This document shows, one piece after another, positions 105 to 40,152 of a stretch of DNA of 64,000 nucleotides. The notes beneath the pieces were generated by a model. That model saw only the letters and a program-made list of their open reading frames with translations, did not search any database and was not told where the DNA came from. Origin of the DNA: Ophelia neglecta (lineage: Eukaryota); the NCBI GenBank assembly GCA_965285935.1, contig OZ260661.1:139066001-139130000 (forward strand), written 5' to 3'. Every line of letters begins with the position of its first letter. Within the stretch, counting starts at the first letter, position 1. The translations under genes and the position numbers were made by a program.

Positions 105-1696
<1,592 letters not shown>

Positions 1697-2911: not shown

Positions 2912-4372
<1,461 letters not shown>

Positions 4373-8127: not shown

Positions 8128-10713
8128 TTATCAATCGAAGGATAATCTGACACAGATTATCATATATATTTAAAATATAGAGTATTAATAATCAATAGGG
8201 AAGAGCATTTGAGTTGAGAATCAAAAAATTACAGCCGATGCCAGAAAGCACGTGGTAAATGAAAAGGAAGGTATTTGCGTGCCTAGTGTCGCCTCTCCTC
8301 ACTTGCAATCACCTGATATGCCAGCTGATTCAGGTAGTAGTAAATAATGTCGGTAACTTTAGATTGGTTCGACTCGAGTTCACGGGTTTGCCTTACACTG
8401 CGCACGCGCATGGCTAAAAAGACCTACATGTATTTAATAGCACTTTTTCGACTCCGGCCATATTATGACATATTGTGGAAATTAATCAACCATTGCGTTA
8501 TCTTTGCTGTGGAAAATATTCTTTCACGTAAATTTGCAAAATATGTCTTATTCACCTTCCCCTCGCTTTCTTAACTCCCTCCTCGACATTTTATCTCACT
8601 CCTCGCTATTTTAACTCGCTCCTCGCCGCTGAACCAATTTACACACTCATGTTCGTATGCGGTATTATGTTATCTGCTCATTTACCATGTAAGTAGAGAA
8701 ATACTCATCCAAATGCACATTAATGCATGCAATGCATATTATCTCTGCGAAAAAAATAACATTGAGGTCAGATGTGCTATCTGCGAGGTTGGTACAATGA
8801 AAATGGTTACATTCTATCAGAATAGCATTTATAATCAAAACTTATCCGACATCGACTGCTCAAGAAGCAATTATTAGCATACTACATGTGTTAGTTAAGT
8901 GGTTACTCAAATACAAACAACAACATTTAATTGCACACAAACAGGAAGTGTTTCCGAATGAATTCCGTGTATATATCGTTTATGGCAAACATAATGGGAC
9001 TGACTTGGGGAGATGAGAGGGTGCATCAATACTTATCGACAGAAAGATATGCCAGGTGTCAATGTGTAACTGTCGATTAACTGCCTTTACCCTAAACAAA
9101 GCAACGTGTCGCATTTTAATAGTTTGCAACCATGCATAAATTAACATACTACTGAATGCCAGATTGTTTATAAATGCAACCGGTTTCCAGTACCCATTGT
9201 AACTACCTATTTACGAAAAATTAAAGTGTAGACTCATATATTATCATACAATTATGTTTCAGTTTATTTTTTCTTGATAAAGGATTACTGTATATGTTAA
9301 AACACTTAAATATAGGTACAAAACTGTAGCTCCCCAAAATTGCAAAATAGCCCATCGAGCGGACCCTCCAACCACTAACCTAAACCATAGTCGCCGTAAT
9401 GCACTGCCAAACCAAAGAGTTAATGACTGAGCGCTACTTATTGGGCCATCCTTGGTCCTACTCACAGATGTTTTATCTGCCGCTCTAGTCAAAGCTGTAA
9501 AACAAATTGAGCCACTTCATCATATGATGATAAAGTCGAAAAAGCGTGTGGGAGGGATTTAAAAATGGATGTCCTCCATAAATTGTCAGGTCTTGGAATT
9601 CAGTTATGCCATATCCAATCCATTTATCGTTCGATGCTTGCCAGTGGCTTTTAGGGAAACAAGTCTCACATCCGCCGAGTCAAGTTTACACATTTATATA
9701 GCGCTCAATATGCTAAGCATGATGGGCACAAATTAAGAACGTGTTCTTCAATTAAATATACAAAACAATGAATGATGCCAACAAAAGCATTGCATAACTA
9801 ATTTATTTATACTTCCTATTTTTCGGACGCTAGTCAAGGGGGTGGTTATGATTTCCCGGTTTATTAATGATGACACGTGGTTATTATTTTGCTGAGGATA
9901 ATAGGTCTTAACCATTTGAACACTAGCAGGAATGCCCATGAAAAAGGGATTTCTCAAAAAAAAGACAGGATGAAAAGAGGTTTGTGATGCTTCGTCTCTG
10001 CACCGGAAGCTACACATTACAGCCTCTCGGTGTACTATAAAATATATGTCGGAACCCAAAGCTAGCTGATTGCCGCCCTCGCCTCCCTCCCCAGAGCGAT
10101 ATTTTCTTATAACACCCGCCCCCCCCCCTTTTTTTTCTATTCAGCTCATGCTCAAATGTGGTTGGTCTCTACACACTCCCCTCAAGACTGTTGTCCCATT
10201 TCGTATTCCCCGCTAAACCGACCTCCCCCCCCCCCCCCCCAGCTATATTCACACATCGTCCTTCTGTGAAACAGAATTTCTAATATATAAAAGTATGTAA
10301 AAACGTGTTATCGTTTTATTTATACTGTAAATGTCAGACTTTTCAATTGTCAACTTTATATATTATTTAGTAGTGGATAGTGCATTTGATTAATTTAGAT
10401 GCTGCTTATGTTCCTTACTAGACTAAATGCCAATTAAACACACAGTTTGATGGCTTGCAGGAATCGTGGGTTCCTACATCGTAGACGTGGATTCCAAACA
10501 CGGCCTTGTATTATAAATATGTACTGATTACAAGGAAACAAGACGTCAATTTTGAATGTGATAAAGGAACACAAACCGTAAACCCTTAACTTTGATTAGC
10601 CATGTCTTTCGCGCAATATCTCAAATTGTTTCCTCAAACTATGCCTTAAGGCGTTTAAAATGATATAACGACAGAATTTGCCTCGGTATCCAAACAAAAT
10701 TTGAAATAATTTG

Positions 10714-11889
10714 TTATTCAGCTGGGTCAAACTCATTCCGTTTTTCTCCCCGTTCAGTAAGATCCATGTTTTCATATTCATTTAAATTGGACGTCGCTTT
10801 TCTTGCAACCCACCAATCCGTTAAAGGGGGGATGATGTTTCCAACAATGACAAGACAGATTCCCATCACTGCCTGCCAATTATGGTGTCCAGGTTGGTAG
10901 TAAGCAAGAATAGTATACTGAAAAATTCCAAGACAAACTATCGTGGAAGTACGTAGGATGGAGAATGTAACGAGAGGAATCATTTGAACAGAATATATAA
11001 ATAAGCCTGCGCTAATCCCAACTGTCCACCCATGACTAAGAAGTAACCCCCAACAATTTATATTTGTTGGTAAAATTGGAGATTCAAGTATAAGCATCAG
11101 CACAACAGAAAGAATGAAAGCAATGAATGCAATCCAAAATGAGATGATCTGCGGATTAACTGCCGATATACACTTGTTTATGATGAACAAAACGGCAAAC
11201 ATCCCTGCGGCAGATAACGTTGTAAATACATAACCCTTGAAATCGATGTTCATGGGTTCATTTGCATGAAAAGTTGAGTTTAAACTATTGTTGTTGAGTT
11301 TGCAGTGTCTTTCACTGGGCAGTGAAAAATTAGTATCACTGGCGAAGCACGTATACTGACAGGAACCATAAGCTACATCAGGTACATCCGTAAAGCCAAG
11401 AAAGTTAGGTTGAGTTATAAAGGTCACGCCGACTGTACATAACACAGAGGCACTAGCCGTACTCACTGAGCATGCTCGTTGAGAAATAGCCTGCTGAACA
11501 GACCCAAACACAACAATAAGCGTGGTTTGGAATCCTATCAACAATGTAACCGGTAGTATTGGAGCAGCCGAATACATAAAATGATTGGTCCCCAAAGCGA
11601 GAATGGAAACAATGAATACCCATCCGAAGTATCTTCTTTCGACGCTTGGGAGTGTTCCTTGTGCAACCAAAATGATACAACTCACCAAGATTTGTGGAAA
11701 AAATCTAAAAGCATTTAACTCCTGATCAGGAATGAATCCTCCCAATGCCTGTGCACTGGCTATGCCACAAGCATGACCAATTGACCCTAGAAGGCAGGTA
11801 AGACATCCCCATACGCAGTCAGACAAGATATAGCCATAATGGTGGAGCGCTGTGTCTTCAAATATCCGGTTTATCCAAGAAGACATCAT
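10714..11889 (-). CDS. SLC35G/EamA (DMT superfamily)-like multi-pass membrane transporter, single coding exon
   Basis: Uninterrupted ~391-aa ORF from the ATG at 11889, with about 10 hydrophobic segments in two EamA-like halves (e.g. IPDQELNAFRF...Q; YTILAYYQPGHHNWQAVMGICLV). Confidence 0.7.
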   Translation of the reverse strand: MMSSWINRIFEDTALHHYGYILSDCVWGCLTCLLGSIGHACGIASAQALGGFIPDQELNAFRFFPQILVSCIILVAQGTLPSVERRYFGWVFIVSILALGTNHFMYSAAPILPVTLLIGFQTTLIVVFGSVQQAISQRACSVSTASASVLCTVGVTFITQPNFLGFTDVPDVAYGSCQYTCFASDTNFSLPSERHCKLNNNSLNSTFHANEPMNIDFKGYVFTTLSAAGMFAVLFIINKCISAVNPQIISFWIAFIAFILSVVLMLILESPILPTNINCWGLLLSHGWTVGISAGLFIYSVQMIPLVTFSILRTSTIVCLGIFQYTILAYYQPGHHNWQAVMGICLVIVGNIIPPLTDWWVARKATSNLNEYENMDLTERGEKRNEFDPAE

Positions 11890-13089
11890 CGGGAGCGATA
11901 AACTTTCATATATCACAAGTGGAAAAATTCTCAGCCGTATTTGTCACAATTAGTCTTATTAGTATGCCTTTTGAAAGTAAGTTGATACAAGCATATGTGC
12001 ATTGCCAAATATAGTTTTCAGGGTGTATTATAGCAAGCACGTTTCACCGTTAGTGAACTGGCAATGATGTTTGTGGGACTGTGGCTGACGGATCCTGATG
12101 AATTGAAATGCTTTGACAGTATGTCGTTTGCTTAAAACGGTGCTTTATATGTCGGTTAACACTCCAGCTGTTTTAATGTTGTGCATATTACATTAATTTT
12201 TAACGTGGAACCAGGCTCCCAGCATATACATGTGTATCACAGCTATTGTATATATAGATATCACTAAGTAAATCTATAAATATATGTGACGCATCAGAGA
12301 TAATAACTTGGGTAGTCCAGTAATTGTGGTCAAATAGGTTTAGGCCCGACTTTACCAACTCTACACTAGTAGATTTAGTGTTGAAATGTCAGCCTGTTAG
12401 CCACAGGCACCAGCAAATATCAACAAAGGCAGGAGCAGTTTGTAGGTGTTCAGTGGAGGACACATTGTTTTATATTTCTTACAACTTATGTAGCCCATAT
12501 AGAAGGTAAAGTTGTCAAATATGTTTAATCTAACAGTTAAAGTGTTATCAAATAATGATACATATTCTAGTTAAGTTTGGTTGTGTGTAATTTTGTAAAT
12601 CATAAGTTAAGTATATAACTTGCCAGACTGGCTCGGTGTATTGCATTGTATATGTATGTGCAATGGTGTGCAGTTTCTCAACACATGTGATTTCAAGCTG
12701 ACTGAGAGTGGTTATTAATCATATGTATGGTGTTTGAATTGACGATGTTATTATTTCGGTCCAATATATGTGTTTTATGAAGTATTAATGAGCATTTATA
12801 TCCCGACTACATAATTTAAGGCATATACATTATTCCCTTTTTTCATTTACAGTTTAACCGTGAACACTCCAACAACTGTCTACAATAGGCCTATTGTGTC
12901 AATATCTAATGACTGTATGTTCCAAAAATAATAAACAAAAAACCTTAAGACATAGTGACGCATTTAGCTTGTATCAAGGGCTACCAAAGGCTATATAAAG
13001 TTTAACTTCTAGGTTCGTTTCACCACAGAAAGCTGCCAATATTGGCTACAAGTTTCAACAAATTCGACTAGTGTTCCATATAGTGCATC

Positions 13090-21700: not shown

Positions 21701-24700
21701 AGAACGCAGTGGCACTATTTCTTTTATATCATTATACATTTATAAAGAGACTCGTTATTGTCAAATGTTCATGTTGAATATAGTATTTTTTTCGAGAATT
21801 GGTTAATGATGTGAATCAAACGAGAGTGAAGATACACTAATTTTTATGTACATATACTGAACATAACTGTACAAAATTTTCTTTATATGTGAAGATCAAA
21901 TGATTTTTTTTCTGTCGGTACTTTTATATAAGAATTAAAAATATCTGTCTGGCTTAATATTAGATGCGTGGATTATCAGAAATGATATGCTATATATATA
22001 TATATTCTTCGAATGTTAATCATTTAGTCTAGTAGTCACATCTTTTTAAAGTGCAGTAGTCGCTTTACTCTTAAAGTCCTAATATGGTCTGGGTATTCAA
22101 TTAGGTCATTTCAATCTGTAAGGCTCCGTAGCTGAAGCGGGTCAAATCTTAACTGAGATTAAAATCAGAATTAAATTGCTTAATCGGCCTTAAATTGCTT
22201 AGGGTTTCTAAAAGCAGGATGCGCTCTTCCTATCCAATTTGGTCGTTAATTTATTCCTGATCAATAGAAACACGGATAAACGCAGTCTCAAGTAATCGGT
22301 TATAGACTAATATAATACCTACACGCAATACCGATTCCAGACACAAGGTACACGGCCCTCAAATTAAATGAAATAATCCACGAATGCTTATATTGGACAA
22401 ACCTATTGGACACTGGAAGGTCACCAAAGCTGTAGACATACTTTGACCCAGGATTACACCCTCGATAGGACTTGTAGCATGCTTCTCGAGAAATGCCTTT
22501 AGGTCCGTGAGCGTGCTGCCAAACGTAATATTAGTCACAAAAACTTTTTTATCATCAATACAACCATGTACATCTGGCATTATAATTGCAGCGGCAAGGG
22601 GTTTCACCGGTAAATGCATCTCCTTTGGCCACTGCGGGATACTAGCCACTCTTTCAGCAACTGGAACAATTGTTGAATAAATTAAAGTAAATAGCCTACT
22701 TTCCTGTTTAAAATTAATGGGATGATTGACAGAAATGAGTCCAGTTAATTTCTGGTGACACCTAGGGAAATATTCTACATAACTAATCTCTAAATATTTA
22801 ATGTCTTATAACTTTTAAAACCAATTATTAAAGACCCACATATAACATTTATTATCATATCAAAATGGCAATATTAAGATCGAATGTTTCCGAAAATGTA
22901 ATTGAAAATATTAATTTAACAATGCGAGGGTATCTTATAAACGCCTCCAAGTCCTTTTTCACATTCCCTACCTTTAGCAGATTTGAATGTGATGGTGACC
23001 GAGTTTGCAGATATCAGTTCGTCTGCATAGAATTCCTCTATTGTACCGCCTCCTGATCTGGGATCGCTCTCAAACCACCATTTGAGATACTCCCTTTCGA
23101 TAGCCTGGGGAATATTGGTAACAACGACTGCTAGGCTACAACCAGTGGTGACCGATTCTGTATATAGAGGAGATCTTTAAGAAAATTGTGTCCGGTCTAC
23201 TCGACAGATTAGAATATGCTATACAATAAACTAAAACTGTAGCAACTAAATTGTTATTATTAAGGTTCATCTTTAAACTATTCGCCGCGGTCATGTCAGT
23301 CAAATTGAAAGTGATACAGGAGGGAATCATTATAAGTGTATTCACACATTATCTTTCCCAATATTATTTTTTGTTGATAATAAAGAACCTATATAACATT
23401 GTTATAATAAGTTGAAACACTTTGTATCAGAAAGTTTTTTTTTTGTATCGCGAAAAGATATTTATTTGTATTTTATTCTATTGGTGGTTAAACATGATGG
23501 AAAATATAAGAATTACCTTCATTCCTGGCAGTGTCTCCCAAATGATTTCCGCACGAAAACCTACAATATATTAAAGCGATGACAGTTAAATATTTATTCA
23601 ACTTTATCAATTATGACGTTCTATTTCTTCCAATTTTCGTGGTTACCTGTTCGTAAGTCTGTTGAGGTATGGGTTTTGCACTGTTCTCAAAAATGAGGTA
23701 CTAAATGTGTACTCATAAAAAGTCGCAATGGCCCAAACATTTGCGCTCATTCATGCACTTTAAACAGAATTTTAATTTGCCATAATTCACGCTGCGCCTT
23801 AATTTCAAACTGATCGCCTCTTAGAGTAAATCAATGCTGACAACAAATCTTAACAAGTAATAATTTCGATTAACCTTTCCAAGATGACGATAAACGTGGG
23901 TCTTTTCGAAGGCACAAATACTAAACATCTGGTCATGATTTTCTCTGTATCCTGCACCTGCTTTCTCAGGCTGGTATAAGCCATAGAGTGCTGTGGTAAA
24001 CGTCGATCATTAAGAAATGAGGTTACACAGCGCCGAAAATCCTTCGATGTGTCAGGGTCATGCTCGAACTCTTTTTGGAATGGAAACTGAAAGTCAGGAT
24101 TCAGAAGACAATACAGTACACAGCCATAAGCCCAAACGTCAACCATTTTAAGTTCAGACATATTTGCGGATTTCAGATATCCAAGTATTGCCTCAGGGGC
24201 TTGGAACGGGATTGTTCCCCTGTCAACGTTTGCGGTGCGAGACGCTAGAATCGAATTAGTTTGAATGTTACAAGACCGTGCCTCTCCAAAGTCAGTTATC
24301 TTACACTCAATCACTATATTATCATCAAGAACTCCATTTTTGGTGTTCCCCACGAGGATATTGGACGGTTTAAGGTCTCGGTGAGCGATGTTGCTGTCGT
24401 GTAGGAATGCAAGTCCCTGAGCAGTGTTATTTGCAATAACCCTAATGATATCATACTCTTCTTGAAATAAACCAACAGCATCACATTCATGCAGCAATTT
24501 CAGAAGTTCACTTAGGTTTGTGACCACTTTGTTAATTCCGTATGGTTGTAAGTCGAAGGCCACATATTCCATTACAATGGCAAGTGGTTCAGCGACCGCG
24601 CCCAGTATTGACACTATATTAGGGTGATTCAATGCACAGAGTACATTCAACTCTTTGATCAATGTTTTAACGTATATTTCGTCATCGTCCTTTTGGTTCG

Positions 24701-25045
24701 TTTTCATTACACCTTTCGATTCTACAAATGAATAAGATAATTATTAAAACATTTGGTCAGTATCAAATTTTACTGTTATTTCGGACATACGATATGATAT
24801 AAGGATAACGTTAGTACACCCCGTTTAATAATGCACAATTAATTTGTGTTTATCAAACCCCTACCTCTTTTCAGTTTAAAAGTCACCAAATCTGCTCTAC
24901 CAAAAGAACCTGCCCCGATAGTCTTTTCAACCTTCAGGTCCTCTGGTGTCCATACTTTAACTCCAGCGCTTTCCAAAGCTTTTTTGCGGTTAATATGTTT
25001 ACACTTCAATTCGTGATAGTTCAGTTGGATTTTTGGTCTGTCCAT
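18732..25045 (-). CDS. Protein kinase - 3xRRM - KH - DTC fusion (RING-less DTX3L-like), ~1120 aa
   Basis: Nine exons form one open 3363-nt frame: 25045-24865, 24721-23875, 23560-23517, 23157-22972, 22660-22403, 21414-21184, 21044-19663, 19203-19025 and 18786-18732. All introns are GT-AG with matching phases. Kinase motifs are GAGSFG, VMK, KE, HRDLKPSN, DFG, APE and DVW. PARP14/DTX3L-type RRMs are WFESDPRSGGG and LYFESQRSGGG. The DTC reads GQPHGTM...FPAGNQQ / AFEARVLFVIG..ITWN / YLPSVIEQLAALGIY*. The kinase-to-RRM link depends on the donor AAG|gttaat and a 44-nt exon. Confidence 0.78.
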
Positions 25046-27578
25046 TTCTATAAGAAAAATGAATGATTTGACATTTCACATTGTTTCCGTAGCAATGAAA
25101 CCTATAACACTGAATCGCAACATATGATCGCCTAGTTGTTCCCGAAATATTTTCTACATTTGACTAGTTAAAAGCATCATACATTGGTCAAAAAATAAGA
25201 ATGGTAGATACGTAATGTGTTTAAACCATGCAGTGCAGAATGGGGAAATACACAAAACCGGATCACAGAAGGCATATGCATGACGTCAACACCAAATGTG
25301 CATCAAACGCCCGCGCTCTGATGAAGACATTTATGAAGCAGTTAAGTAGAAAAAAATGTTAAATTCTGCCATAAAATCTGCCCCTTAAATAACTTTGATT
25401 AACTATGTAAGGTTACTGTTTAGTAAGCCTAATTCATCAGCTATGCATCATTGTGGACTGGCTTTTCATCGCATCCTGGACTTGAGAAGTATTCACCGAA
25501 AAACGCTTAAACCAATGGAAATAAGGAATGTAGACAAATCAGTTTGCCCTCTGTAAACATATTGGCCAACTCTCAAAGCTGGCCGATTGATAGACACTGT
25601 CACACGCGATTTCAATATTTAATCAAAATTATTGCAATTAATAACTCAAAATTGGGAAAAAAACTTCTTGATATGCTATGGCTTTGATAACTTTCTCGTA
25701 GTAGTTTGCAAGAATTGAATAAATATCTCATTGCTGTAAGAGCGAATGGAACGAATCTTCTCACATTCAAAACTAATTCGAGATATGCAGTTAACCAAAC
25801 ACCTCCGGCTCAGATGCCTCAACTAGAGGTGTCTATGGAAAAAGCAGGGCATGTCAAATGAGAGGAAACGATCATGGATATAAAAGTTTGTCATGTAGGA
25901 ACACTCATTTCTTTGCCCTCTAATGATTTTGCTGCCATTTTGAAATTTGCTTTTATGTATCTAACATAATCATATGACGACTTTTCGGCTGGGACAAGTT
26001 GGAGTTTTTTTGTGTGATATATTAATCCAAGCAAATTATTATATGCCGCTTTATCAATCACTTAAACTAACGGGACATACATGGTGTCCCCTCTTGGAGC
26101 TTGTATCGCATGTATCCGCATGTATCGTCAGGGTACTCAGGTGGTGGTGGGGGCAATCTAGATGAGGGAGGCTATTTTACACTTTCCTTTATTATTTGGC
26201 GGGGCGGGGGGGGGGGGGGGGGCGGAGGGGGAGGGGTTAACGACTTTTTACCATACCCTTAGGAAAAAAAAATAGAAAATAAAGATATCTTTTGTTTATT
26301 TGCAAATGAAATTCAAACAATCATTGGCCCCTGCTTCGCGTCTCCAATCTTGTTCCCCAAATATTTGAAATTTAATCACCTTTTCTTCTTACTTTTCACA
26401 GTCTAACATATTTCTAGGTATCAGTATGTAAGGCATTATAGGCAACATTTGTAATGCAATGTGTGAAAACGGCCGGCTGACGTTCGGGGGGAGGGGGTGG
26501 GGTGTCGGTGTATGAATCTCCTGCTTTCTTTTCTGTATAGACTGGGCTGTTATGTATATTTGCATTTGTTTTGCTCAAGTTGGCGAAAAAAACCTTCTTT
26601 AAACCTTCTTTAAACCTTCATCTGTCAGAAATTCCTTGGTTCCATTATTTCGTGTAATATTTTTGGCTATGTTGCCATGGTAACCAACCATAATGCTAGT
26701 AATACACAAATTGCCGTAACTTGCTCATTATCAGTCACGAAGAGCTGGGTTTTAGCTCAAAATGATAACCTGTTTGTCAAGAACAATTTCTGGTAATAAA
26801 ATGTAGCAATCATAGCCTAATTTGCATAAATACAAGATGGCCACCATTTTCAATATTTGCTCATTTTTACCTTCTTTGGTTTGGCAAGCCAATATATTAA
26901 ACTATCATGTAATCATGTACGAAGTATGAAGATTACGATATTCATTTCTTGGTGTAAATATAAATATAAATATATGTATTAAGTGTATGAAGCTCTTATC
27001 GTGTTCATAAGGTCACGTTACCTGGCTCCATTTTTTTTTGTCAAAATTCTCAATTATTTTACTTAATTATGAAATCTTGACCAAATAGACCTTTTCAACA
27101 TAAACATTGTGTTTCAACAAAGATATCATGTGATTTAAACCTTAATTTAGTAACTTATGTTCATTATTATATTCTTAAAAAATTAAGGGAGATTGGGTCA
27201 AAAAGGTTTTGATTCTTTCAATAACAGGTGGGCGCGGGGGGGGGGGGGGGCTCGAAAAAGGTTTGAAGCTATACTTAAGGGGAAAGCAAAAATATCTGAA
27301 TAATTTTTTTCCCAAAGGATACCAAAAGACCCAGCTAAACTATTCCATTATTCAAAAGCGTGGCCGAGTTGTTAGGGCGTCCGCCTCGCAAGTTGCAGAT
27401 CGGGGAGCAAATCGCGTCAAACCCAAGACGTAACGAGACACTTAGGTGCAAAGCCCCTTTGGAATCCCGCGATAAAGTCATGGGCATAGGCCAAAAGTTT
27501 TAGCAGTCTTGTATCTCATCATTGAGTTGCTTGTCACAATCCTAAGAATACTTAATGTGAAATACTGAGGGCAAAAGT

Positions 27579-29765: not shown

Positions 29766-31990
29766 ATTCTGATATATTCTAATCTTAACACAGTTGCTTT
29801 TATCGGCATTTAGCGACCATAGTGACAGGCTGTTCTAAAAACTATTAACTCGAAGAACCTACCTTAAGGTTGAATAAGGATATCAATAGTCGATTATCTT
29901 CACGCTAGGTGTTCTATTTGCATCAGACTTAAAATAAACTTCCCACGTATTATATCAAATCGGCCGAAATCTATCGTGTTGTATTTGCGGTGTCGTGTTT
30001 GGCGTTGTGCCACCACCAGTGCTTTGCTTTAGTACATTTGTCAGGTCATGATATGAATAGCAACACTTACGAAACTTAAATACGGAATTTGATTTGCGGG
30101 AAGAAGGGGAATTTCCAGTGTCATCTTTGGCATTGTGCCCCCCCCCCCCCCCAACACAGTTGCTTGGTCTACCATCGTCATTTTGAACCAGGTCATGTCG
30201 AGTGAGGGTCATGTCAGTTCAGGTCTATCAAGGTCAAAGGTCAAGTTCAAGGTCTTGAGAACCAATGTGAGTGAGTCAAACTATAGTGTTATCTGTTAAA
30301 CACCGCTGTCTTGCGAGTATACGTTTATATGTGAGTATAGATTTATGTCTAATTACGCATACATACGTATGCCTAGTGCACTGTAAGTCATTGAAGCACG
30401 CTTAGTACAGCAATAGCCGCTCTCCAGTTTAAGACATACATTTTATATTGGCTTCCTTGTCATAATTCTAACTAGTTAGGCATGGTGGAATAGCACATTT
30501 ATCGCTCGGGTCGTGCAACTACTAACGACTGCAGCCCTTAAACATTTATTTGTTGTTGGTGTGTGTGTTGCCCATTATAATGACGACGCTCACATTGAAT
30601 ATTAAGTGATGGGGTGGGGGGGTGGGGTGGGGTGGTGGAGGCACATCCATATCCATCAATACTAGGTAGGTGCCTCCAGAAGAGTCGTTTTGTTTTTGTA
30701 TTGTTTCTATGGGGGGGGGGGGGGTAGTTTCTTTAGCTAAGGGTCCCCAACCATGGGTCCCTTTTTCATGAAGGTATCGTTATTTTAACATTTTCCCCCT
30801 TTACCAAAAGGTTGTTTTTATGGTGAGATAAATATATTTGTGCTTGAAGAGCCCCCTGGCGATACAAGAGTCCATAACAGCCTCTATCCCCAATAAATAG
30901 GCCATATTGCGACTTCCGGAAAAAAGATTCCGTTAAAATTTGCACTTATTAACGGTAGGGTTTTAAGACTTCTGTTTTGAGGCCAGTCCCCCCCCCTCCC
31001 CGCCCCCAGGCGTTCAACTCTTAACGACTGCAAAGCTGCCTTTGAACTGAATTTTTGTTGGTTTTGTGTGTGTGTGTGTATGTGTACACAGCTCGCTGTT
31101 AAAGTTAATCTTAAGTCGACATCAACATTGAATAATAAGTACACTTCTGATGAAGGGAGCGTTCATAATTTCCTGCCTGGGGTGCTCGGGAAATAGAGGC
31201 GTATAATAGGCGATTTCCCTAGAGAGTGCACGAACATGGGAGGAGGGAGGGGGGTACTGCCATTTTCATCCTTACTAGGTTTTTATTTTTCTCTGCCTAC
31301 TACCAAATGAGGCGGAATACATAAAATAGGCCTGCTTCTTCCGCCAGACAATTAAAATACTTGTCTTGAACATATGGTCATGCATCAGCCATGTAATGTT
31401 ACAATATGTAATTGTAGCTTCAGTTTATTATAAATGACAAGCCATTAACGGGTTTGAAGTTATTGCTGGTGCAAACCATCATGGATTATGTCTCCCACTT
31501 TACTCCAGCCTGTGCTGTGTAGCTTCTAAGAATTTATTAGAAATTCAGTTCTAAATCGTCATGACTAGTTGACACTTATAAGAGGCAAACATAGTTTATT
31601 TCCAAAGGAAAGAAGGTAACAGATAAAATGTTTGGTATGTGGAGATTGTATATCATGATAGCCATATTCAACTTTTTTAATAATTGGTGAATGAAATATG
31701 TTGAGGTTTATTGTGATGTTTGACACGGAGCAGACCGATTCATTTGGCAAAAGCCATAAACATGAAAGTTATGGTTTCATGAATCATGCTAAGGTAGATC
31801 AAAAACTCTAAGCATCAAGTGATAACTTTGACAGGAATATAGTATTTAGGAACATTTAAAAGCGTTTTCTGGACAATGATAGGAAAAAGTTGTACTTCAT
31901 AAAACCAGAGGAATTCGTGTACATTGCAGTGTTATTATATTGCATATCTTCCTTTTTATCGTCAAGTTGACCACAACCTTCATCCTCGAT

Positions 31991-34900
31991 ATGGCAACTG
32001 GACGGAAGAGAATCCAACTTAAGCAGCCCGAGCCAGCTAAGTGCCCTGTTTCTGTCAAATTGGAAAACAAACTCGATATTGGCGTTCCAGTTTGGTCACT
32101 GGGAGATGTTGTAACAGAGAGTTACTTCGATGATAACAGTTTTGGAGCAGTCAAAACTGCTCATCATAAGACCGAACCAGGTATGAGATAATTGAAGACG
32201 TCTCAAACTATGCACTTACCTGTCCCAGAATATTGATGAAGTTTTTGATGTTTATTTTGATTTCCATCTGTTTATGTACTTAAAATAAAATTAAAATGGA
32301 AATGCGGTAAAATGTTAACATCCCAGTTATCATTGCAGCTAATTTTATTATATGTAAATAATTTTTTCATCGTTTAGGGTTGGCGGCCTTGTGGGCCACG
32401 ACGATAAAGCACACCAGTGATGAATGCTTTGCTAAACTGTTTTTGTCCGACATAGAACTCTGCCAGTTCAAACACAAACATATCCTTCAGATAGTAGCAT
32501 TGTCCATACAGCCACTAGTTGTTTATCATGAGGTAAATTCCTTCTCATTTGAAACGTACAACCAGCCAATTGTCGTCCACAATTTGGCAGATTTGTTGTA
32601 TCAATGTGACCGAGCAGAAGTAGTGCCCAGGATATATAACGACTACAATGTGCCAAGGACAGTTATAGACGCCGTGGTATCGGGCCTTGCGTTTTTACAT
32701 AGCAAAAGTGTCAATTGTGAACAATTAACCCCACAGAATATCATCATTGGCCAAAGCAGACTCGACAATGCTAAAGAAGAACTTGTCTGTAAAATTGGGG
32801 ACTTTTTACAAACCAGACGGTATTGCGAGCAGACACAAACTGGGTTGACCACCAAGTCCCTAGCGAACGAGCGCCAAACAGTCCCGTTTCAGCCACCGGA
32901 AAAATTAGTATATCAAGGGCGGTATTCTGATCCAGGGAAAACCGATGTTTGGTGTCTCGGTATGGTCACCTTCTGTGTCCTGAACCCTGATGTTCCATTT
33001 CCATTTTACCTAGAGTATACTCGCTCGCAGGCAAAGGATTTACGACAATTGGTAATTGAGAGTCTGAAGCAGAATAAGGTACCAGAAATGTCCCCTAAGT
33101 ATGACATTGGTAAATCAGAACCCCACCTCGTGGCACTGATGCAGCTTGCCTTGATCGATAACCCCGAAGAAAGACCGAGAGTGTCCGACATACAAAAATG
33201 GTAAGAAGTTCGTTGTTTTTTTTAAGTAAATATTGCAACTGAACCTGGAACCTATTCCAGATAAAAATAAGCCTAGGTTAATAGGTAATCCCAGATTAAT
33301 TGCTCAATAAGTGTTGATAATGACTTCATAAAAGGCACAATGCGGGTTTAGCCGCAAACCGGCTAAATAATTGGTTTATTGATGTCAAGCTTGGACTGTG
33401 AATTGAAAAATGGTGCGTGTCATAAATAACAAGCATTTTTTAATGATAATTCGGTCATTTCAGACAACCTTTGGCCAATAGTAAAGACAGATCTAGTAAT
33501 ATTTTGATACCTGGCTATTATCACCCGAGCTCTAAGAGCGTGGTCATAGGCAAAAATCTCTTTGTTAGTATAACAGGACTTTTTGTTAAGCCGAAGCTCA
33601 TTTTAAGCACGGTTTACACCAGTAAGGGCTTAGAGCACTTTTTATCTAACATGCCCCTGGTTATTGCGATAATAGTTTTGCTTTTAAAGGGATTTTTGAG
33701 GAATCGTTGTTGCTTTGGAGGCAAAGCTTTTATGTCCGGAGGTGGGGGTGCGGGTGGAGGTGGGATTGGGGGCTGGAGGCCTTTTCATATCCTTGATGGA
33801 GTTCGATTGAATTGCCTCCCGCTTTCATTGCTGAGGACAGTTTCTGAAAACGCCCTTGTGTCTTTATCTTACTTTCAGTTTGATAGATGGAACAGGACCC
33901 ACTTGTTATACACTGTCTAACAGACCAGAGTTACTGTGTGACTTACTGCGAAGCACTGAGTGCCAAGCTCTAATACGAAATGCACTAAGGAGCAAATCTA
34001 TAAAAATCACGATTGGCTCAAGGAACATAGTTGTTTACGCTCTGACCAGGAAAATGGCTGAAGATACAGTAACCTTTTTCAATGAAAATTTCATACACGA
34101 GAACATTGAAGTTGACACTGCTGGCAAACCGGTTTTAGTGTCAAAAAAATGGGAATCATTTTTAGCAAACCACTTGGAGGAAAACAAAGGTCTCTTGCAG
34201 ATGAAAACAAACCATGATCAAAGCACAGTGCACATTTGTGCTGCTAAAGTTATACAGATTGTAGACAAAATAAAGCATTTTCTGGAGGAAAACACCATAG
34301 TCGAGAAAAGAATCAGTATTCCAACTGAGAAAATGGAATTTGTGGAAACGCATCTTATAACATTTACTAAAACAATTGCTCAAATGCCAAATCTGTCTTT
34401 CCACTCAAATGGTGGCGATCCCTTTGTACAGATAAATGGTAACATGAGCGAAATCAAGACAAGTACCGACATGATCGAACGATACACAAAAGCCATTGCC
34501 ATTGTGGCATATGCCCTGGAAAAGCCCGCCCTAGTTTGGCACTTTCAACAGCGGAAAGGTGAAGCTAGCCTGTCCGAAATCAGTCGACACCACAATGCTA
34601 TCATTAGAATGGAAAGAGAGGAGGGGACTTTCCAATCGAGTAAGTCAACGTCTCATTTCACTCTGATTTCGTTCGCATCGTTCTGGTCTACATTGGAAGA
34701 CAATTCAATTATATTATACCTTTATTTCTGAGATATATATGGGTCCAATCCTTAAGTGTTCGCAAAGACTGGTTACAATTAATGAATACCGTGTGCTTGT
34801 ATTGCAAAGTATAAGGTAAGAATAAAACTTGAAAATTGACTATATTGTGAATGTAAATAGGCACATGATAAATATTCAAATATTACAAAGATAACCAGAA

Positions 34901-37900
34901 ACATGCTATTACAACCCTTACAAGTGAATGGACATGTAAAGAGAAACAACTATATCAATGGAGCCAAGCGCATTGGAACGTTCGGCATATTTATTCTGTG
35001 ACTGAGACAGTTACAGTGGCAGTAAAACATATAATAGGTCAAAAAATGTCTTCGAAACAGATCTTCAAATACACGTATTGTTTACGAGTTTTGAGGGATC
35101 TTATATACAATTATAATAAAGAATTGCATGGCTTTTGCTTGATTTTACCCCAAAATGAGGCGCACTGTGCTATGTATACCTCGCTATAGACATCTGGTTC
35201 GGTTGAAGTTAGCCTCAGTTAACCTTGTCTGGTTAGGATATATCTGATCAAATACTTTTAAATTAAAGTATTATCAATCTGGTTTTAGGTTTATCAAGCA
35301 GATGCATAATCATCACGGCAGAGTCCATCGATGTCGCAAAGACGTGTGTAGAAACATTAAAAGACTTATGCAAAAACATTTGGCTGGAAAAATCGGTCTC
35401 ATATCCAGGAGAAAAGAACACTGAAGATTGTCGCAATCAAGTAAGTGCATGGATTTTGCACTTTTGCCATTACCTGTCATTTTTCCTTTCCATCACTATT
35501 ATACTGTGTACATTGCTGGTTCTGTCTTTTTGGCATATTTATATTGTTTAGACCGTTCTAAAACCAATTGAAATGTGTTATGTTTATGACACAACATTAT
35601 CAAAGATCCATTATATTAGCTGGTGGTACAATTCCTGTACAAACTTCATCACTCAAGTTTCAATGGTATTGTGTCCTAGGTTTTGACTATAAAAAGAATG
35701 GCCGTTCGATTGCACGTAGACATGGATCTAGAAGGCGATGCTATAAAACTAAGCGGGGTAGGGGATCAGGTCAACGCTATGGCAGAGAACATTTACAAGG
35801 TGTTTATAGCCGGAATTGAAAAGGGAGCTGCTGAAAAGGAGCTTGCAGCCCTGACATTACTACATACGCAGGTGTGTTAAGGATTTATTTGCCTTCGCAA
35901 TGTGGCTTTTATCACCAGACTCTCCTTATATCAGATTACGTCTTTTATTGGCTAAATTCTGTGGCAAGCGTCGTTAGTATTTAAGCATGGCGAATTGGTA
36001 TTTAAGGGCCTACATACGACGGTAGCTGGTGATTACTGACCGATTAAACAGACTGGTAATAACTCTGTTTTGTCTTTCGCATATGCACTACAGTTGTATG
36101 AGCAAACTGGTAACATTTGTTTTGTTCAAAGGTGAAATGGTATTATGAAGTAAATGGACAGTTCGTAGAATATCTAGTCGATCATAACGCCACATTGGAA
36201 AGAGCCTATACCGAAGGAAGACATGATATTTCGTTAGTCTCAAATCAGGGTAGGGAAACCGTGAATGTTAGAAAAATGGAAGGTCACAACCAAAGTGGTA
36301 CATTTCGAGTTCTGAGGCAAATTCAAGGTAATGTAATGCAAAAAATGAAAAAAATATCCCTCCGAATTCAGCTACTATGTAAACTCACGAAATATATTCG
36401 ATCGGTTTTTTATTTAGAAACTTCATCAGAAAAATTGCCTGCTGAATGGTCCAAGATGGGTAAAACTGATGTCTTTATGTTGGTTGCCTTGTCCGCTGAT
36501 TCCAAGGAATTCAATGATGTCAAGTGTGAAATACTTAGGACTTCACAAAACAAGATCAAAGAAGTTCTCAAGGTAGCCATTATTCCTATAGTCAGTGCAG
36601 GTAACAACTCTACATTTTAATGTGGAGATGGTAAGGTATAGTAATTTACTACGAGTTAAACCTTAGTATCTTTGTTGGCGGACACGTCATGTCATGTTCT
36701 AACGAGTGGCATGTTCCAGTACTGCGTGTTGCTCATTCTTCAAAGAATATTAATTGATTAAGGCCACCAGAGGTCGAAGGCCATTTGTATTCCGCCAATG
36801 AAATACTCTTGTTGTTACATCGATCCTTCTAATATTATATACACTTGAATATTAAAATAAAGTGATTACTATTTAATCAATTAATTATAGCATTGAAACG
36901 TTCATCTGGTTACAAAAATGTCCATTGTTTATTTAGATTGAGCGAGTTCAGAATCCAGGCCTGTACCGGAAGTACAAAGTCCATAGAGAGGAGATGGTGA
37001 AGTCTGGTACTGCAAGACCGATAGAAAGGCAACTGTGGCATGGATCTGACATAAATGCTATAGCTAGCATCAACTTGTACGGATTTGACCGGGGATACTG
37101 TGGTAAAAACGGTAAGAATATTGAATAAAACAAGCTTTTTTGGTCCCATATTGAGACTTTTTTGGAGCGATTTAATGGCGTATTCCTGTTAAACAATTAC
37201 GCTCCTTGTGCTGGGGATCCACTTCTGTTTTTGTTTCATAAGATATATTTTGTGACAAGAACACTTTTACTTGTCTTAAATATAGGTTAAAATTCTGCAT
37301 TTTTATTAATCTTTGCCTAATGATAGTTCCATAAAACGACTCCCCTATATAGAATATATTTTTGTAGGATTGGGGTTTCTACTCTGTAACATGTAACTTT
37401 GTGGCTGTCTGTTAGTGTAGGAGTGAACATGTGAATTTATTGAATTTGTTAAAAAATATACATTACAAATACAAGAAGAAATACCATGATAGAATTCAGC
37501 ATGAAAGTTATTACTTTATGCATATTAACTCGATAAATATTAAGTATGTTTTGCTTACCAAATAGAGGATGTGTGGCCGCTGTATATGGTGCCGATTCTC
37601 GTTTATAATTTTATTATAGTTGATATTGATGAATGGTTGGCTTCACCCCATACATGAATAATGTGAGGGTAAAAAAATCTATAGTATAAGGTTGTTGAGT
37701 GGTTGAGCTATATAGCCCGAAAACCGTTCTGTATAAATAAGAATATAAATAGCCCAAGATAGTGTCACGCCAATCATAATACCTAAAAACTAGACCCATT
37801 ACAATTTTTTTCCTGAGAAGTAGATCAAATGTAATACCTTTTGTTAACATCTTGATAACTTGTTCGACTTGATCCAATCAACTTTTTTTTCTTTTCCTGT

Positions 37901-40152
37901 GAGCTTAGATTCTTTCTTGATTAACATGTTTTCCCGATGCCAAAATATTGGTATCATTGGCAAATATTATAGGAAATACAGCTCAAGATTCATTCATAAG
38001 TTCATTTACATATATTAAGGACACCAATGGCCCAAGTATAGAACTCTCGGGTTCTACACTTATTCTGTAGGTTAACACTCAATGATATAGAGATAATGTT
38101 CTATGTCGTGTAAGCAAACTATGTGCAATATATCTATAAGAATATCATGTGCCACCGTTTCAAAGGCTGGGTAAAGTCTATACATATACCCATTACAATA
38201 TTCCCATTGTTTATGAGAAGTTTATCTACCAGGCCAGTCAATGCCATATTTGAGCTGTGTTTTCCCCTAAACCCTAAACAAGAGTCTTCATACGTCACAC
38301 GCTCAAATATATAAGAAAACAGATCTAAGATGGCAGAACACAGACTGGGTGATAAGTGTTAAGAAATACGCTTTTTTCACATTTATGTACAGGAATAAAA
38401 GAAGCAAGTTTGCGTTCTGAAGGAAAAGTGGCAGTGGTCAATGACATGCTTGCATAAGTACCATCACAGCCATGACCTGTAGTTTGTAATGATGTGATCA
38501 TTGTTTTACTTTACTCATATCAGTTTCTTCAAAATACGTTGTGCGAGTAACACCTTGGCCAACACATATTTTTTGGATTTTTATGACGCTAGCCTGGGGC
38601 CTACATTTAAATACAATTGATTAAGAATGGATATAACCCGCCTGTTTGTATCATTTATAAAAACAACAGACTTGTTTTTAATACCTTATTTCTATTAAGA
38701 ACCTCTTTAATAGTTCTCCAGGTTGTCCTCAAATTACTTTGGTTTCCTTCATTTTATTATAATAATACTCTCTTTCTTGCATACGCAAAAGCTTATTCTT
38801 GGCTGCCTGATAATCTTTATAACATTCTTCAAAGATTAGGATTATTTCTAGGTTTTTCAATAATTTCAGAGCAAAAAAAATCAGCCAACGTTTTTTATTA
38901 CCTTAAAGGAATAGGTTCTTTATGAACCCTTCATTATAAGGTACATGCCATTTGCCAGTCATTAACCATCGGCCAATTTACACTTGATGTTTGTATAAAA
39001 TAATGCAATAATTCTAGCTAAATATTTCCTTGATTTACAATAACGAACATTGTTTAAGGGCTTGGAATTTTTGCAAATGCTAATTGTTTGAAAATGATCT
39101 AAAGCATGGTGTAACACGTATCATTTATTAACTTAATATTCCTATCATCATTACTTAATATTTTGTCAATTAATGTGGCAGAATTCCTCTGTATCTGTTT
39201 AGGCCTATTGATTAATCAAACAGATCCGTTGAACATGGTTTTGAAAATTCCAGAGTGAGAAAGTGAATATAAGCATTGAGAAAACTAATATTAATATTAA
39301 TCCTGGCAGACCTAAACCTGTTTATTGTCATGCAAATACCAGTAATGGATAAAAAGATAGCTCAGATGATCAAACATTTGTCCATTCTATCATAAGAAAC
39401 GTTAAGGTGGTGTTGTTTAATATATATGATGTGTTCATCAAACCTAAGAGCACCAAGTTCACAAAGTGAATACAGTGGTGCAATAATGAAGAAAAAGGTG
39501 CATATAGATTTTTAATCCGGAACATAAAATAAGGAACATAGAGTATATACAGGGAACATATGATGCACTGGGAACAACATAGATATAAACAACAAAGCTT
39601 ACAGGCTATCTGTAACCATGTTCACATAATTCAAATATTTACACAATGGAAATATTTTGCACAATTGGCATTTAATTTATTTAATCAAATCCTTTACATG
39701 AAGTACCATGTTTTTAATGAGGATACTTTTACCGGCAGTCCAACAGCGTTTATTTTCCTTCTTGAGGTTCGGACTTTCGTCCAGACTGTGGCTCTTTCTA
39801 TTGTCTTTAACATTAAATCAAATTGTTCACCCTAAACACGACTGTTATGATTTCTGATAACAATTCTGTTTTACTTTCAGCTACTGCATTTGGCAGTGGA
39901 GTTTATTTTGCTGCCAACGCGTCCTATTCATACAGTTATGCCAAAGCCGACAGCAGCGGAAAAAGGTACATGTACCATTGTAATGTGTTGACCGGAGATT
40001 TCGCTCAAGGACACTCATCTATGAGAGTGACGCCGATTAAGAATGGATTAATTAAATTTGATTCAGTTGTAGACAATACCAAGTCGCCAAGTATATTTGT
40101 AATATTCAACGATGCACAGGCATATCCAGGGTATTTAATCACATTCAAATAA
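31991..40152 (+). CDS. PARP14: Pseudokinase - KH - WWE - PARP catalytic (mono-ART) fusion, PARP14/15-like, ~971 aa
   Basis: Nine exons form one open 2916-nt frame: 31991-32180, 32378-33200, 33879-34639, 35289-35440, 35680-35871, 36132-36327, 36418-36572, 36937-37111 and 39881-40152. WWE reads VKWYYE...FVEY...LERAY. The ART reads IERVQNP...LWHGS...GFDRGYCGKN/ATAFGSGVYFA...FDSVVDN..SPSIFVIF..AQAYPGYLITF* (H-Y-I triad). The symbol denotes the subfamily only. Confidence 0.85.
37600..39500 (-). mobile_element. Degenerate CR1/L2-type LINE in the last PARP intron
   Basis: Minus-strand remnants include IFANDTNI (FADD-like, ~37945-37966), SILGPL (~38030-38050) and endonuclease-like segments near 39150-39400. 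Many stops are present. Confidence 0.65.

What the first reader, a model, noticed from the sequence alone, without database searches (positions are those of the whole stretch)
31991..33900. Pseudokinase N-terminally fused to a mono-ADP-ribosyltransferase
Compared with its neighbour, every catalytic motif is altered: GAGSFG>DDNSFG, VMK>ALW, KE>SD, HRDLKPSN>CEQLTPQN, DFG>DFL and APE>PPE. The C-lobe scaffold is kept (DVW, C.LNPD..FPF..E, RP) and the frame is open. A strong donor TG|gtaaga (33200) matches the phase-2 acceptor at 33879. Loss of catalytic residues with a preserved fold points to a selected regulatory pseudokinase, in the manner of MLKL or JAK JH2, controlling the ART domain (inference).
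Basis: partly seen in the sequence, partly recalled or inferred. Interest (0 to 1): 0.85.

Follow-up and report, generated by a model that had tools for sequence, protein, structure and literature searches.

The report
Dead kinase domain heading a PARP14-like gene
An unnamed animal genome carries a fast-evolving, catalytically dead kinase-fold domain that most likely forms the N-terminus of a trimmed PARP14-like mono-ADP-ribosyltransferase. This domain combination did not turn up in four literature searches, but no RNA data exist to prove the two parts are spliced together.

Summary
Two exons (31991-32180, 32378-33200) encode a kinase-fold domain (Pfam Pkinase 49 bits; AF2 pLDDT 90). The G-loop, beta3 Lys, alphaC Glu, HRD, DFG Gly and APE Ala are all altered, while C-lobe scaffold residues remain.

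It is the only fully degenerate copy among 54 aligned paralogs of a family with at least 59 members. It also has by far the longest tree branch (4.8 versus a median of 0.014).

Fusion to the downstream KH-like/WWE/PARP (H-Y-I) exons is likely but unproven:
- The family's conserved phase-2 donor is kept.
- A nine-exon GT-AG model chains in phase to 971 codons.
- No poly(A) signal lies in the 678-nt gap.
- Two paralogous loci show intact kinase, RRM, KH, macro, WWE and PARP exons collinear on one strand.
- No RNA run exists, so no junction was seen.

"Selected regulator in the manner of JAK JH2 or MLKL" is not supported:
- The open frame and retained scaffold argue for past constraint.
- Present SNP density in these exons equals that of flanking non-coding DNA, and pN/pS is 0.45 (not significantly below 1).
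- No ortholog was found, and the fold shows no specific JH2 or MLKL likeness.

First-stage notes of this scan had already flagged this gene pair on this same window.

The parts
31991..32180 (+). Exon 1: start Met, N-terminal KIQLK-type leader and degenerate glycine-rich loop (FDDNSFG). Ends in phase 1 at donor G|GTATGA.
   Evidence: Homologous to exon 1 of the neighbour kinase and of paralog regA. The intron position and phase match the neighbour's.
32181..32377 (+). Intron 1 (197 nt), GT-AG. Carries a 9-nt deletion polymorphism at 32320.
32378..33200 (+). Exon 2: the rest of the kinase fold, from beta3 to alphaI, with catalytic motifs lost (no beta3 Lys; SD; CEQLTPQN; DFL; RQT; PPE) and the scaffold kept (DVW, LNPD..P, RP).
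   Evidence: Pfam Pkinase 49.2 bits. Alignment to 53 paralogs. AF2 pLDDT 90.2, pTM 0.90. Foldseek matches to kinases.
33201..33878 (+). Putative intron 2 (678 nt). Donor GTAAGA sits at the family's conserved phase-2 position. Its TAA (33202-33204) would end the protein if the intron were not spliced. No AATAAA or ATTAAA inside. Holds a G-rich dispersed repeat and a 4-nt deletion polymorphism at 33282.
33879..34639 (+). Exon 3: tandem KH-like repeats homologous to the KH-like region of the PARP14-like paralogs. The first in-frame ATG lies about 66 codons in.
   Evidence: Paralog hits and alignment. The AF2 model has low confidence (pLDDT 65) but a repeated beta-alpha-alpha-beta-beta-alpha pattern, and its best Foldseek match is 3n89 'KH domains', E 1.8e-4. 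This is weak evidence.
35289..35440 (+). Exon 4: small linker/KH-like exon, phase 1 to 0. An alternative in-phase acceptor lies at 35301.
   Evidence: Similar by eye to the pre-WWE region of regA and regB.
35680..35871 (+). Exon 5: KH-like exon before the WWE domain, phase 0 to 0.
36132..36327 (+). Exon 6: WWE domain.
   Evidence: Pfam WWE 3.3e-6, 27.8 bits against a cutoff of 21.1. tblastn to the regA WWE exon.
36418..36572 (+). Exon 7: start of the PARP catalytic domain.
36937..37111 (+). Exon 8: PARP catalytic domain, carrying the His of the triad (LWHGS).
   Evidence: PDB sequence search: PARP10, 14 and 15, E 8e-10.
39881..40152 (+). Exon 9: end of the PARP catalytic domain, with the Tyr (GVYFA) and the third triad residue Ile (SIFVIF), then the stop codon.
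   Evidence: Pfam PARP 2.2e-11. PARP15 and PARP14 at E 1e-21, with the alignment placing Ile on PARP15's Leu.
23853..25045 (-). Comparator and possible partner: the intact two-exon kinase module of the divergently oriented kinase-RRM-DTX3L-like gene. Its start lies 6.9 kb from ours.

Best explanation
The locus encodes a pseudokinase. It is a two-exon kinase-fold module descended from a lineage-specific family of at least 59 active kinases. In this genome those kinases form the N-terminal module of RRM-containing PARP14-like, DTX3L-like and other genes.

This copy has lost its G-loop glycines, beta3 Lys, alphaC Glu, the HRD triplet and catalytic-loop Lys, the DFG Gly and the APE Ala. It cannot work as a conventional phosphotransferase and probably binds nucleotide poorly (inference).

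It is most likely spliced (33200 to 33879) onto KH-like, WWE and H-Y-I PARP catalytic exons. That gives a 971-codon protein: a PARP14-like mono-ADP-ribosyltransferase that lost its RRMs and macrodomains but kept a non-catalytic kinase fold at its N-terminus.

The likeliest role (inference) is a fast-evolving protein-interaction or targeting module. It would bind what the active paralogs bind, or the paralogs themselves, and so place or gate the ART. It is unlikely to be a nucleotide-driven switch.

Shown: the fold, the motif loss, the open frame, the conserved splice sites, the in-phase exon chain and the paralog architecture. Inferred: the transcript, the inactivity and the function.
For: Kinase identity:
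- Pfam Pkinase 49.2 bits.
- At least 59 paralogous exons in the same genome at E down to 3e-35, none more than 34% identical.

Motif loss:
- Alignment of 54 paralogs shows 52 with every catalytic motif, one with HRY, and only this copy with all motifs changed.
- 27 of 45 family-invariant columns are retained: 2 of 9 catalytic against 25 of 36 others (Fisher p = 0.019).

Fold and frame:
- AF2 pLDDT 90.2, pTM 0.90, with kinase matches in the PDB.
- The frame stays open despite about 70% residue change. Chance of that is about 1e-7.
- Three DNA runs show no frameshift or stop; all listed indels fall in introns.

Fusion:
- The donor G|GTAAGA sits at the position and phase conserved in most paralogs.
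- Intron 1 shares position and phase with the neighbour.
- A nine-exon GT-AG chain runs in phase with no internal stop.
- No poly(A) signal lies in 33205-33879.
- Exon 3 begins with a strong acceptor and has no nearby ATG.
- Two paralogous loci have kinase, RRM, KH, macro, WWE and PARP exons collinear on one strand.

ART domain:
- The H-Y-I triad and the PARP15/14/10 matches come.

Disproportionate divergence of the kinase part:
- Identity to regA is 30.5% in the kinase against 59.8% in the PARP exon. For regA against regB the figures are 41.8% and 53.3%.
- The terminal branch is 4.78 against a median of 0.014 (quick tree).
Against: - No RNA evidence of any kind. The three runs holding the locus are DNA contigs with no joints.
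- No ortholog exists, so long-term conservation cannot be tested. The best hit among 1.84 billion representatives is 32% identical.
- SNP density in exons 1-2 (1.5%) equals that of flanking non-coding DNA (1.2%) and is about 25 times that of exons 3-8. With 8 non-synonymous and 5 synonymous events, pN/pS is 0.45, not different from neutral (p = 0.18). One allele changes the residue next to the former beta3 Lys position, W to L. Thirteen further differences were not listed by the tool.
- The AF2 confidence leans on an alignment made of active paralogs.
- The paralog architectures are themselves inferred from collinearity, not from transcripts.
Confidence: 0.6

Rival explanations
1. Decaying relic. 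The kinase exons lost their function when the catalytic residues went, and they now drift under relaxed constraint. They are still carried, or sometimes skipped, at the 5' end of the PARP14-like gene, have no role of their own, and are on the way to loss, as the RRM and macro exons already were.
For: - SNP density equals non-coding DNA, and pN/pS is not distinguishable from 1.
- The branch is extreme.
- The W-to-L polymorphism sits next to the former beta3 Lys position.
- The gene has already shed its RRMs and macrodomains.
- Broken kinase fragments with stops exist elsewhere in the family.
Against: - 336 codons stay open after about 70% residue replacement, with chance about 1e-7 for exon 2 alone.
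- 25 of 36 non-catalytic invariant positions are kept.
- The start codon and both splice sites are intact.
- All listed indels avoid the exons.
Confidence: 0.2
2. Two separate genes. A stand-alone 337-residue pseudokinase ends at the TAA at 33202-33204. An independent PARP14-like gene has its first coding exon at 33879, fed by an unseen non-coding 5' exon.
For: - An in-frame TAA follows the last kinase codon at once.
- No junction read exists.
- Frame compatibility alone has a one-in-three chance.
- The relatives found in the protein collections showed no PARP domain; many are single-exon ORF calls and only a few long ones were scanned.
Against: - The TAA is part of the GTAAG donor consensus, found at the same place in paralogs that clearly continue into RRM exons.
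- No AATAAA or ATTAAA lies in the 678 nt.
- Exon 3 starts with a strong acceptor and has no ATG for about 66 codons.
Confidence: 0.12
3. An atypical but active enzyme. The domain still binds nucleotide and catalyses phosphotransfer or another reaction using relocated residues, as WNK kinases or SelO do.
For: The catalytic-loop Asn and the DFG Asp, both metal ligands, are retained, and a Lys lies three residues after the beta3 position.
Against: - The catalytic base Asp is Gln.
- The catalytic-loop Lys is Thr.
- Two G-loop glycines are Asp and Asn.
- The alphaC Glu is Asp, with its preceding Lys lost.
- The nearby Lys aligns with a non-catalytic loop Lys of the neighbour.
Confidence: 0.05

Closest known systems
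Human PARP14 / PARP15 / PARP10 (clade 3 mono-ADP-ribosyltransferases)
   Same: - The catalytic exons match PARP15 and PARP14 at E 1e-21 and PARP10 at 8e-10. The triad is H-Y-I, as in PARP10.
- A WWE domain precedes the catalytic domain.
- KH-like repeats lie upstream, as described for PARP14, PARP9 and DTX3L (PMC11080071; weak support here).
- The gene sits in a tandem cluster of at least 25 PARP14-like copies next to DTX3L-like genes. PARP14 duplications in clusters are known (PMC13224862).
   Different: - No macrodomain and no RRM.
- An N-terminal kinase-fold domain. It did not appear in the PARP14/DTX3L reviews and comparative study I read (PMC13224862; 10.64898/2026.04.23.720386) or in my literature searches.
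JAK JH2, MLKL
   Same: A kinase fold without the catalytic Asp, placed in the same chain as an effector module.
   Different: - No specific sequence or structural kinship; the best structural matches are FAK, RIPK1 and TrkA at TM about 0.65.
- JH2 and MLKL are conserved across vertebrates and bind ATP. This domain has no known ortholog, and its G-loop carries acidic residues.
- The effector here is an ADP-ribosyltransferase, not a kinase or a four-helix bundle.
RNase L and receptor guanylyl cyclases (kinase-homology domain upstream of a different enzyme)
   Same: A non-phosphorylating kinase fold lies N-terminal to an unrelated catalytic domain. RNase L is also an antiviral innate-immunity protein (my own knowledge).
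   Different: Those domains bind nucleotide and drive dimerisation. Neither property was tested here, and the motif state argues against nucleotide binding. There is no sequence relationship beyond the kinase superfamily.
The same genome's kinase-PARP14-like and kinase-DTX3L-like paralogs (C1:138.73-138.77 Mb, C1:137.15-137.17 Mb; window 18.7-25.0 kb, minus strand)
   Same: - The same two-exon kinase module with the same intron positions and phases.
- The same downstream KH-like, WWE and PARP exon order.
   Different: Those copies keep every catalytic motif and carry RRMs, and in the PARP14-like ones macrodomains too. This copy alone is fully degenerate and trimmed.

Membership tests
Eukaryotic protein kinase superfamily (Pfam PF00069) | Profile match above the curated threshold | tested here: met
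   49.2 bits against a cutoff of 31.7, E 6e-13. Own-genome paralogs reach E 3e-35.
Eukaryotic protein kinase superfamily (Pfam PF00069) | Bilobal kinase fold | tested here: met
   AF2 on exon 2 gives pLDDT 90.2, pTM 0.90. At least 500 PDB kinase chains match at E <= 1e-3. Exon 1 (beta1-beta2) was not included, because the exons were not joined.
Pseudokinase (lacks at least one of the beta3 Lys, HRD Asp or DFG Asp) | Catalytic Asp of HRD absent | tested here: met
   HRD becomes CEQ. All but one of the 53 aligned paralogs keep the Asp.
Pseudokinase (lacks at least one of the beta3 Lys, HRD Asp or DFG Asp) | beta3 (VAIK) Lys absent | tested here: met
   No Lys in any of the three registers: LWA, WAT or ALW. 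The nearest Lys aligns with a loop Lys of the neighbour.
Pseudokinase (lacks at least one of the beta3 Lys, HRD Asp or DFG Asp) | No phosphotransfer activity; nucleotide-binding class | not testable with these tools
   Needs recombinant protein, a thermal shift with ATP and Mg, and a kinase assay.
PARP14/15/10-type mono-ADP-ribosyltransferase | PARP catalytic domain with an H-Y-hydrophobic triad | tested here: met
   Pfam PARP 2.2e-11. His in LWHGS, Tyr in GVYFA, and Ile aligned to PARP15's Leu.
Macro-PARP (PARP9/14/15) | One or more macrodomains N-terminal to the catalytic domain | tested here: not met
   The macro exons of two paralogs give no tblastn hit at E < 1e-3 in 31-41 kb on the plus strand. 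The only macro hits are at 62.2-62.5 kb on the minus strand, in another gene.
Single fused gene (pseudokinase plus ART in one transcript) | Splice junctions 32180^32378 and 33200^33879 seen in RNA | not testable with these tools
   No RNA run holds the locus. The three runs are DNA contigs with no joints. Only indirect support exists.
JAK JH2 / MLKL-type regulatory pseudokinase | Specific kinship to those families | tested here: not met
   PDB sequence hits are weak and mixed: STK16, STK33, IRE1, ULK1. Structural hits are generic.
JAK JH2 / MLKL-type regulatory pseudokinase | Long-term purifying selection on the non-catalytic fold | tested here: inconclusive
   The open frame and retained scaffold speak for it. 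The lack of any ortholog and polymorphism close to neutral speak against it.

The most novel reading that the evidence does not exclude
The pseudokinase is an integrated bait, a non-catalytic copy of the family's immune kinases wired to an ADP-ribosyltransferase. A pathogen factor, or an active paralog such as the divergently transcribed kinase-DTX3L-like neighbour, engages the dead kinase fold and so triggers or directs mono-ADP-ribosylation. The high allelic diversity and extreme rate of the domain would then reflect an arms race rather than decay. More broadly, this animal would own a previously undescribed family coupling phosphorylation, ADP-ribosylation and ubiquitination modules in one gene cluster.
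Probability: 0.15. Interest if true: 0.8.

Novelty: new variant of a known kind. Interest (0 to 1): 0.55.

Why it matters
PARP14, PARP9 and DTX3L form a fast-evolving antiviral axis whose regulation is poorly understood. A lineage in which PARP14-like and DTX3L-like genes carry N-terminal kinases would give a natural experiment on how phosphorylation modules were coupled to ADP-ribosylation and ubiquitination. In this lineage one PARP14-like copy has turned that kinase into a dead fold and dropped its RRMs and macrodomains. If the domain proves functional, it would add ADP-ribosyltransferases to the short list of enzymes governed by a kinase-homology domain. If it is only decaying, it documents a snapshot of domain loss in an immune gene cluster.

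Tried and rejected
- RNA evidence: the run search returned only three runs of one sample. Laid on 31700-37600, they are DNA contigs with no joints.
- Orthologs: an exhaustive HMMER search of 1.84 billion representatives gave no hit above 32% identity and only 307 hits at E <= 1e-3. Long hits carry no PARP, WWE or macro domain.
- Long proteins sharing the kinase domain of P0098: a region-restricted search found 5 proteins, none with PARP.
- Exon 3 as a query found nothing.
- A 400-residue ORF at 10717-11916 on the minus strand, tried for taxonomic placement, found nothing at E <= 1e-10.
- Complex prediction of exon 2 with the neighbour's kinase exon gave no answer (score 0.02). This is no evidence for or against binding.
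- PDB sequence search gave only weak, mixed kinase hits.
The exon 3 model therefore rests on 4 sequences and has low confidence.
- The careful tree did not finish, so the quick tree was used.
- The idea that the pseudokinase is simply a recent inverted copy of the neighbour was not upheld. Intron positions match, but the tree does not place it with the neighbour, and it is no closer to the neighbour (30.9%) than to other paralogs.
- The joined 971-codon protein was not built, printed or searched. The exons were searched one by one by reference. The only joined handling was codon bookkeeping for exons 1 and 2 inside one script, and nothing of it was printed or saved.
Full report
**Setting.** The window is G000:C1:139066001-139130000 of a 762-Mb animal genome. 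It lies inside a cluster of PARP14-like and DTX3L-like genes. At least 25 PARP14-type catalytic exons lie on C1 between 137 and 140.5 Mb. RING-DTC exons and a macro plus RING-DTC gene lie in the window itself. The organism could not be named.

**The observation.**
- Exon 1 (31991-32180) starts at an ATG and ends in phase 1 at G|GTATGA.
- Exon 2 (32378-33200) follows TTTAG and ends in phase 2 at TG|GTAAGA.
- The acceptor CTTACTTTCAG at 33878 restores the frame.
- Exon 2 is open for 274 codons, while its other two frames hold 18 and 19 stops. By base composition the chance of that is about 1.4e-7.
- Pfam calls exon 2 a protein kinase domain (49.2 bits, cutoff 31.7). That is much weaker than the neighbour kinase on the minus strand at 23853-24707, which scores 124.7 bits.

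**Motif state.** I aligned exon 2 with 53 paralogous kinase exons from the same genome. All but two of the 54 aligned copies, 52 in all, keep the beta3 Lys, the alphaC K-E, HRDLKxxN, D[FL]G, RGT and APE. One copy has HRY. Only this copy has all of them changed: no Lys at beta3, SD, CEQLTPQN, DFL, RQT and PPE. Exon 1 is homologous to the neighbour's exon 1, and its glycine loop reads FDDNSFG where the neighbour has IGAGSFG.

Anchored on the shared phase-1 intron the register is LWA, and MAFFT gives WAT. No register offers a Lys, and the Lys three residues later matches a non-catalytic loop Lys of the neighbour. The catalytic-loop Asn and the DFG Asp are kept. Among 45 columns invariant in 12 diverse paralogs, 27 are retained. 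That is 2 of 9 catalytic or ATP-site columns against 25 of 36 others (Fisher p = 0.019).

**Fold.** AlphaFold2 on exon 2, with an alignment of paralogs and database relatives, gives pLDDT 90.2 and pTM 0.90. Foldseek finds only kinases, led by FAK, RIPK1 and TrkA at TM about 0.65. There is no special likeness to JAK JH2 or MLKL. The confidence leans on an alignment dominated by active kinases.

**The family.**
- The genome holds at least 59 such kinase exons, none more than 34% identical to this one.
- A quick maximum-likelihood tree gives this copy a terminal branch of 4.78 changes per site. The median is 0.014 and the next longest branches are 2.14 and 1.51. Its placement is unresolved.
- Most paralogs end the kinase exon at the same codon with xxG|GTAAG, GTAGG or GTGAG in phase 2, and this copy keeps G|GTAAGA there.
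- Intron 1 has the same position and phase as in the neighbour.
- In the paralogs I inspected, the kinase exons are followed on the same strand by PARP14/DTX3L-type RRM exons. After those come either KH-like, macro, WWE and PARP exons (C1:138768477-138731159 with a tandem twin, and C1:137169172-137149116), a DTC-bearing large exon (the neighbour; no RING was looked for), or FN3-like exons in the one C5 copy inspected.

So a kinase at the N-terminus of PARP14-like and DTX3L-like genes is a recurring layout here. It is inferred from collinearity, not from transcripts.

**The downstream exons.** A nine-exon GT-AG model chains in phase to 971 codons plus a stop, with no internal stop. Its exons are 31991-32180, 32378-33200, 33879-34639, 35289-35440, 35680-35871, 36132-36327, 36418-36572, 36937-37111 and 39881-40152.
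- Exon 6 is a WWE domain.
- Exons 7-9 are a PARP15/14/10-type catalytic domain with His (LWHGS), Tyr (GVYFA) and Ile aligned to PARP15's Leu. That is an H-Y-I mono-ART triad.
- Exon 3 aligns with the KH-like region of the paralogs. A low-confidence model (pLDDT 65) shows repeated beta-alpha-alpha-beta-beta-alpha units, and its best PDB match is a tandem KH structure at E 1.8e-4. This fits the KH-like domains described in PARP14, PARP9 and DTX3L (PMC11080071), but the support here is weak.
- No RRM or macro relic lies between 31 and 41 kb.

I did not build or search the joined protein. The exons were handled one by one.

**Is the domain spliced to the ART?** There is no direct evidence. The only runs holding the locus are DNA contigs from one sample, and they show no joints. 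The indirect evidence favours the fusion:
- The donor conserved across the family is kept, although about 70% of the residues have changed.
- The TAA after the last kinase codon is part of that donor consensus. It occurs at the same place in paralogs that continue into further exons.
- No AATAAA or ATTAAA lies in the 678-nt gap.
- Exon 3 starts at a strong acceptor, in phase, with no ATG for about 66 codons.

I put the fusion at about 0.7-0.75.

**Is it selected?** The evidence splits between past and present.

For the past, the answer is probably yes. The frame, the start codon, both splice sites and most non-catalytic invariant residues survived a very long branch. The kinase part also diverged out of proportion to the rest of the gene. 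Identity to paralog regA is 30.5% in the kinase but 59.8% in the last PARP exon. For regA against regB the figures are 41.8% and 53.3%.

For the present, constraint looks weak. The three DNA runs carry at least three haplotypes. In exons 1-2 they show 15 SNP positions, making 8 non-synonymous and 5 synonymous codon events and a pN/pS of 0.45 (p = 0.18 against neutrality).

| Region | SNP density |
|---|---|
| Exons 1-2 | 1.5% |
| Flanking non-coding DNA | 1.2% |
| Exons 3-8 | 0.06% |

The difference between exons 1-2 and exons 3-8 is significant (p = 5e-6). One allele changes the Trp next to the former beta3 Lys position to Leu. All six listed indels lie outside the exons. The tool withheld 13 lesser-supported differences, so these counts are provisional. 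This pattern fits either relaxed constraint or diversifying selection on an immune-gene module. It does not show a conserved allosteric regulator.

**Comparison with what is known.** The ART half is an ordinary clade 3 mono-ART of the PARP14/15/10 kind, except that it lacks macrodomains and RRMs. The kinase-fold half meets the usual sequence definition of a pseudokinase.

I found no report of a kinase or pseudokinase fused to a PARP14-like or DTX3L-like protein in four literature searches. Nor was there one in a recent PARP14 review and a DTX3L-PARP9 comparative study. No such architecture appeared among the database relatives of the kinase domain. That last search is limited, because this genome's own proteins are not in the collection and exon-level queries cannot see long fusions.

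The nearest working analogies are kinase-homology domains placed upstream of another enzyme, such as RNase L and receptor guanylyl cyclases, together with JAK JH2. These are analogies only. A complex prediction with the neighbour's kinase gave no answer.

**Verdict.** The fusion is likely but unproven. The specific regulatory mechanism is unsupported. I class it as a new variant of a known kind and rate it of moderate interest, pending RNA evidence. First-stage notes of this scan (s1-734077, s1-734183, s1-734184, s1-734097) had already flagged the same gene pair on this window.

Noticed in passing
G000 C5:111.3-115.9 Mb, C9:15.8-19.8 Mb, C1:136.2-140.5 Mb, C7:11.3-11.5 Mb, C17:0.5-0.7 Mb (loci L002-L062): A family of at least 59 near-identical to divergent two-exon kinase modules with conserved intron positions. 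In the copies inspected they are followed by PARP14/DTX3L-type RRM exons, and in the C5 copy (L010/L063) by FN3-like exons. This looks like a large lineage-specific kinase-RRM family.
   Followed up: partly
L013-L017 (C1:138725001-138775000, minus strand), with a tandem twin about 57 kb away (kinase exon at C1:138824479-138825270): An apparently full-length intact-kinase, RRM, KH-like, macro, WWE and PARP14-like gene spanning about 37 kb. A 486-residue transposon-like ORF sits in an intron (C1:138739944-138738487). A second PARP catalytic exon copy lies at C1:138726052-138725681.
   Followed up: partly
L018-L022 (C1:137125001-137170000, minus strand): A more compact kinase (HRDLKPAN, DLG), RRM, KH-like, macro x3, WWE and PARP gene of about 20 kb. 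It is followed by a second PARP14-like gene without a kinase.
   Followed up: partly
L055 (C5:98922267-98923055): A paralog whose only catalytic change is HRD to HRY. It may be a second, much younger pseudokinase in the family.
   Followed up: no
window 33650-33800; also 6003-6389, 7836-8150, 27209-27433; and C1:138728224-138727844: A dispersed repeat that translates to G-rich strings (GGGGxGGGG...). One copy sits inside putative intron 2.
   Followed up: no
window 31700-33600 versus 34080-37070: Haplotype diversity drops about ten-fold between the pseudokinase block and the region downstream. Run X2 shows 17 differences in 1311 nt against 4 in 2993 nt, introns included. This may be an old haplotype block.
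   Followed up: partly
window 35040, 32970, 32972, 35069: All three runs (or run X1, otherwise identical to the reference) disagree with the assembly at these sites. At 35040 the difference is an extra A in a homopolymer. These are likely small assembly errors or a minor haplotype. None breaks an exon.
   Followed up: no
window 10714-11916 (minus strand): A 400-residue single-exon ORF, hydrophobic by eye and so perhaps a multi-pass membrane protein, has no homolog at E <= 1e-10 in the 5.8-billion-cluster protein collection.
   Followed up: partly
window 131-775 and 2912-3451 (plus strand): Two nearly identical RING-DTC (DTX3L-like) exons lie 2.8 kb apart, a very recent tandem duplication.
   Followed up: no
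window 18.7-25.0 kb (minus strand) and 31.9-40.2 kb (plus strand): A kinase-DTX3L-like gene and the pseudokinase-PARP14-like gene are arranged head-to-head, with their starts 6.9 kb apart. A recent preprint places the origin of the vertebrate DTX3L-PARP9 head-to-head pair after the lungfish split (10.64898/2026.04.23.720386). This pairing would therefore be independent.
   Followed up: partly
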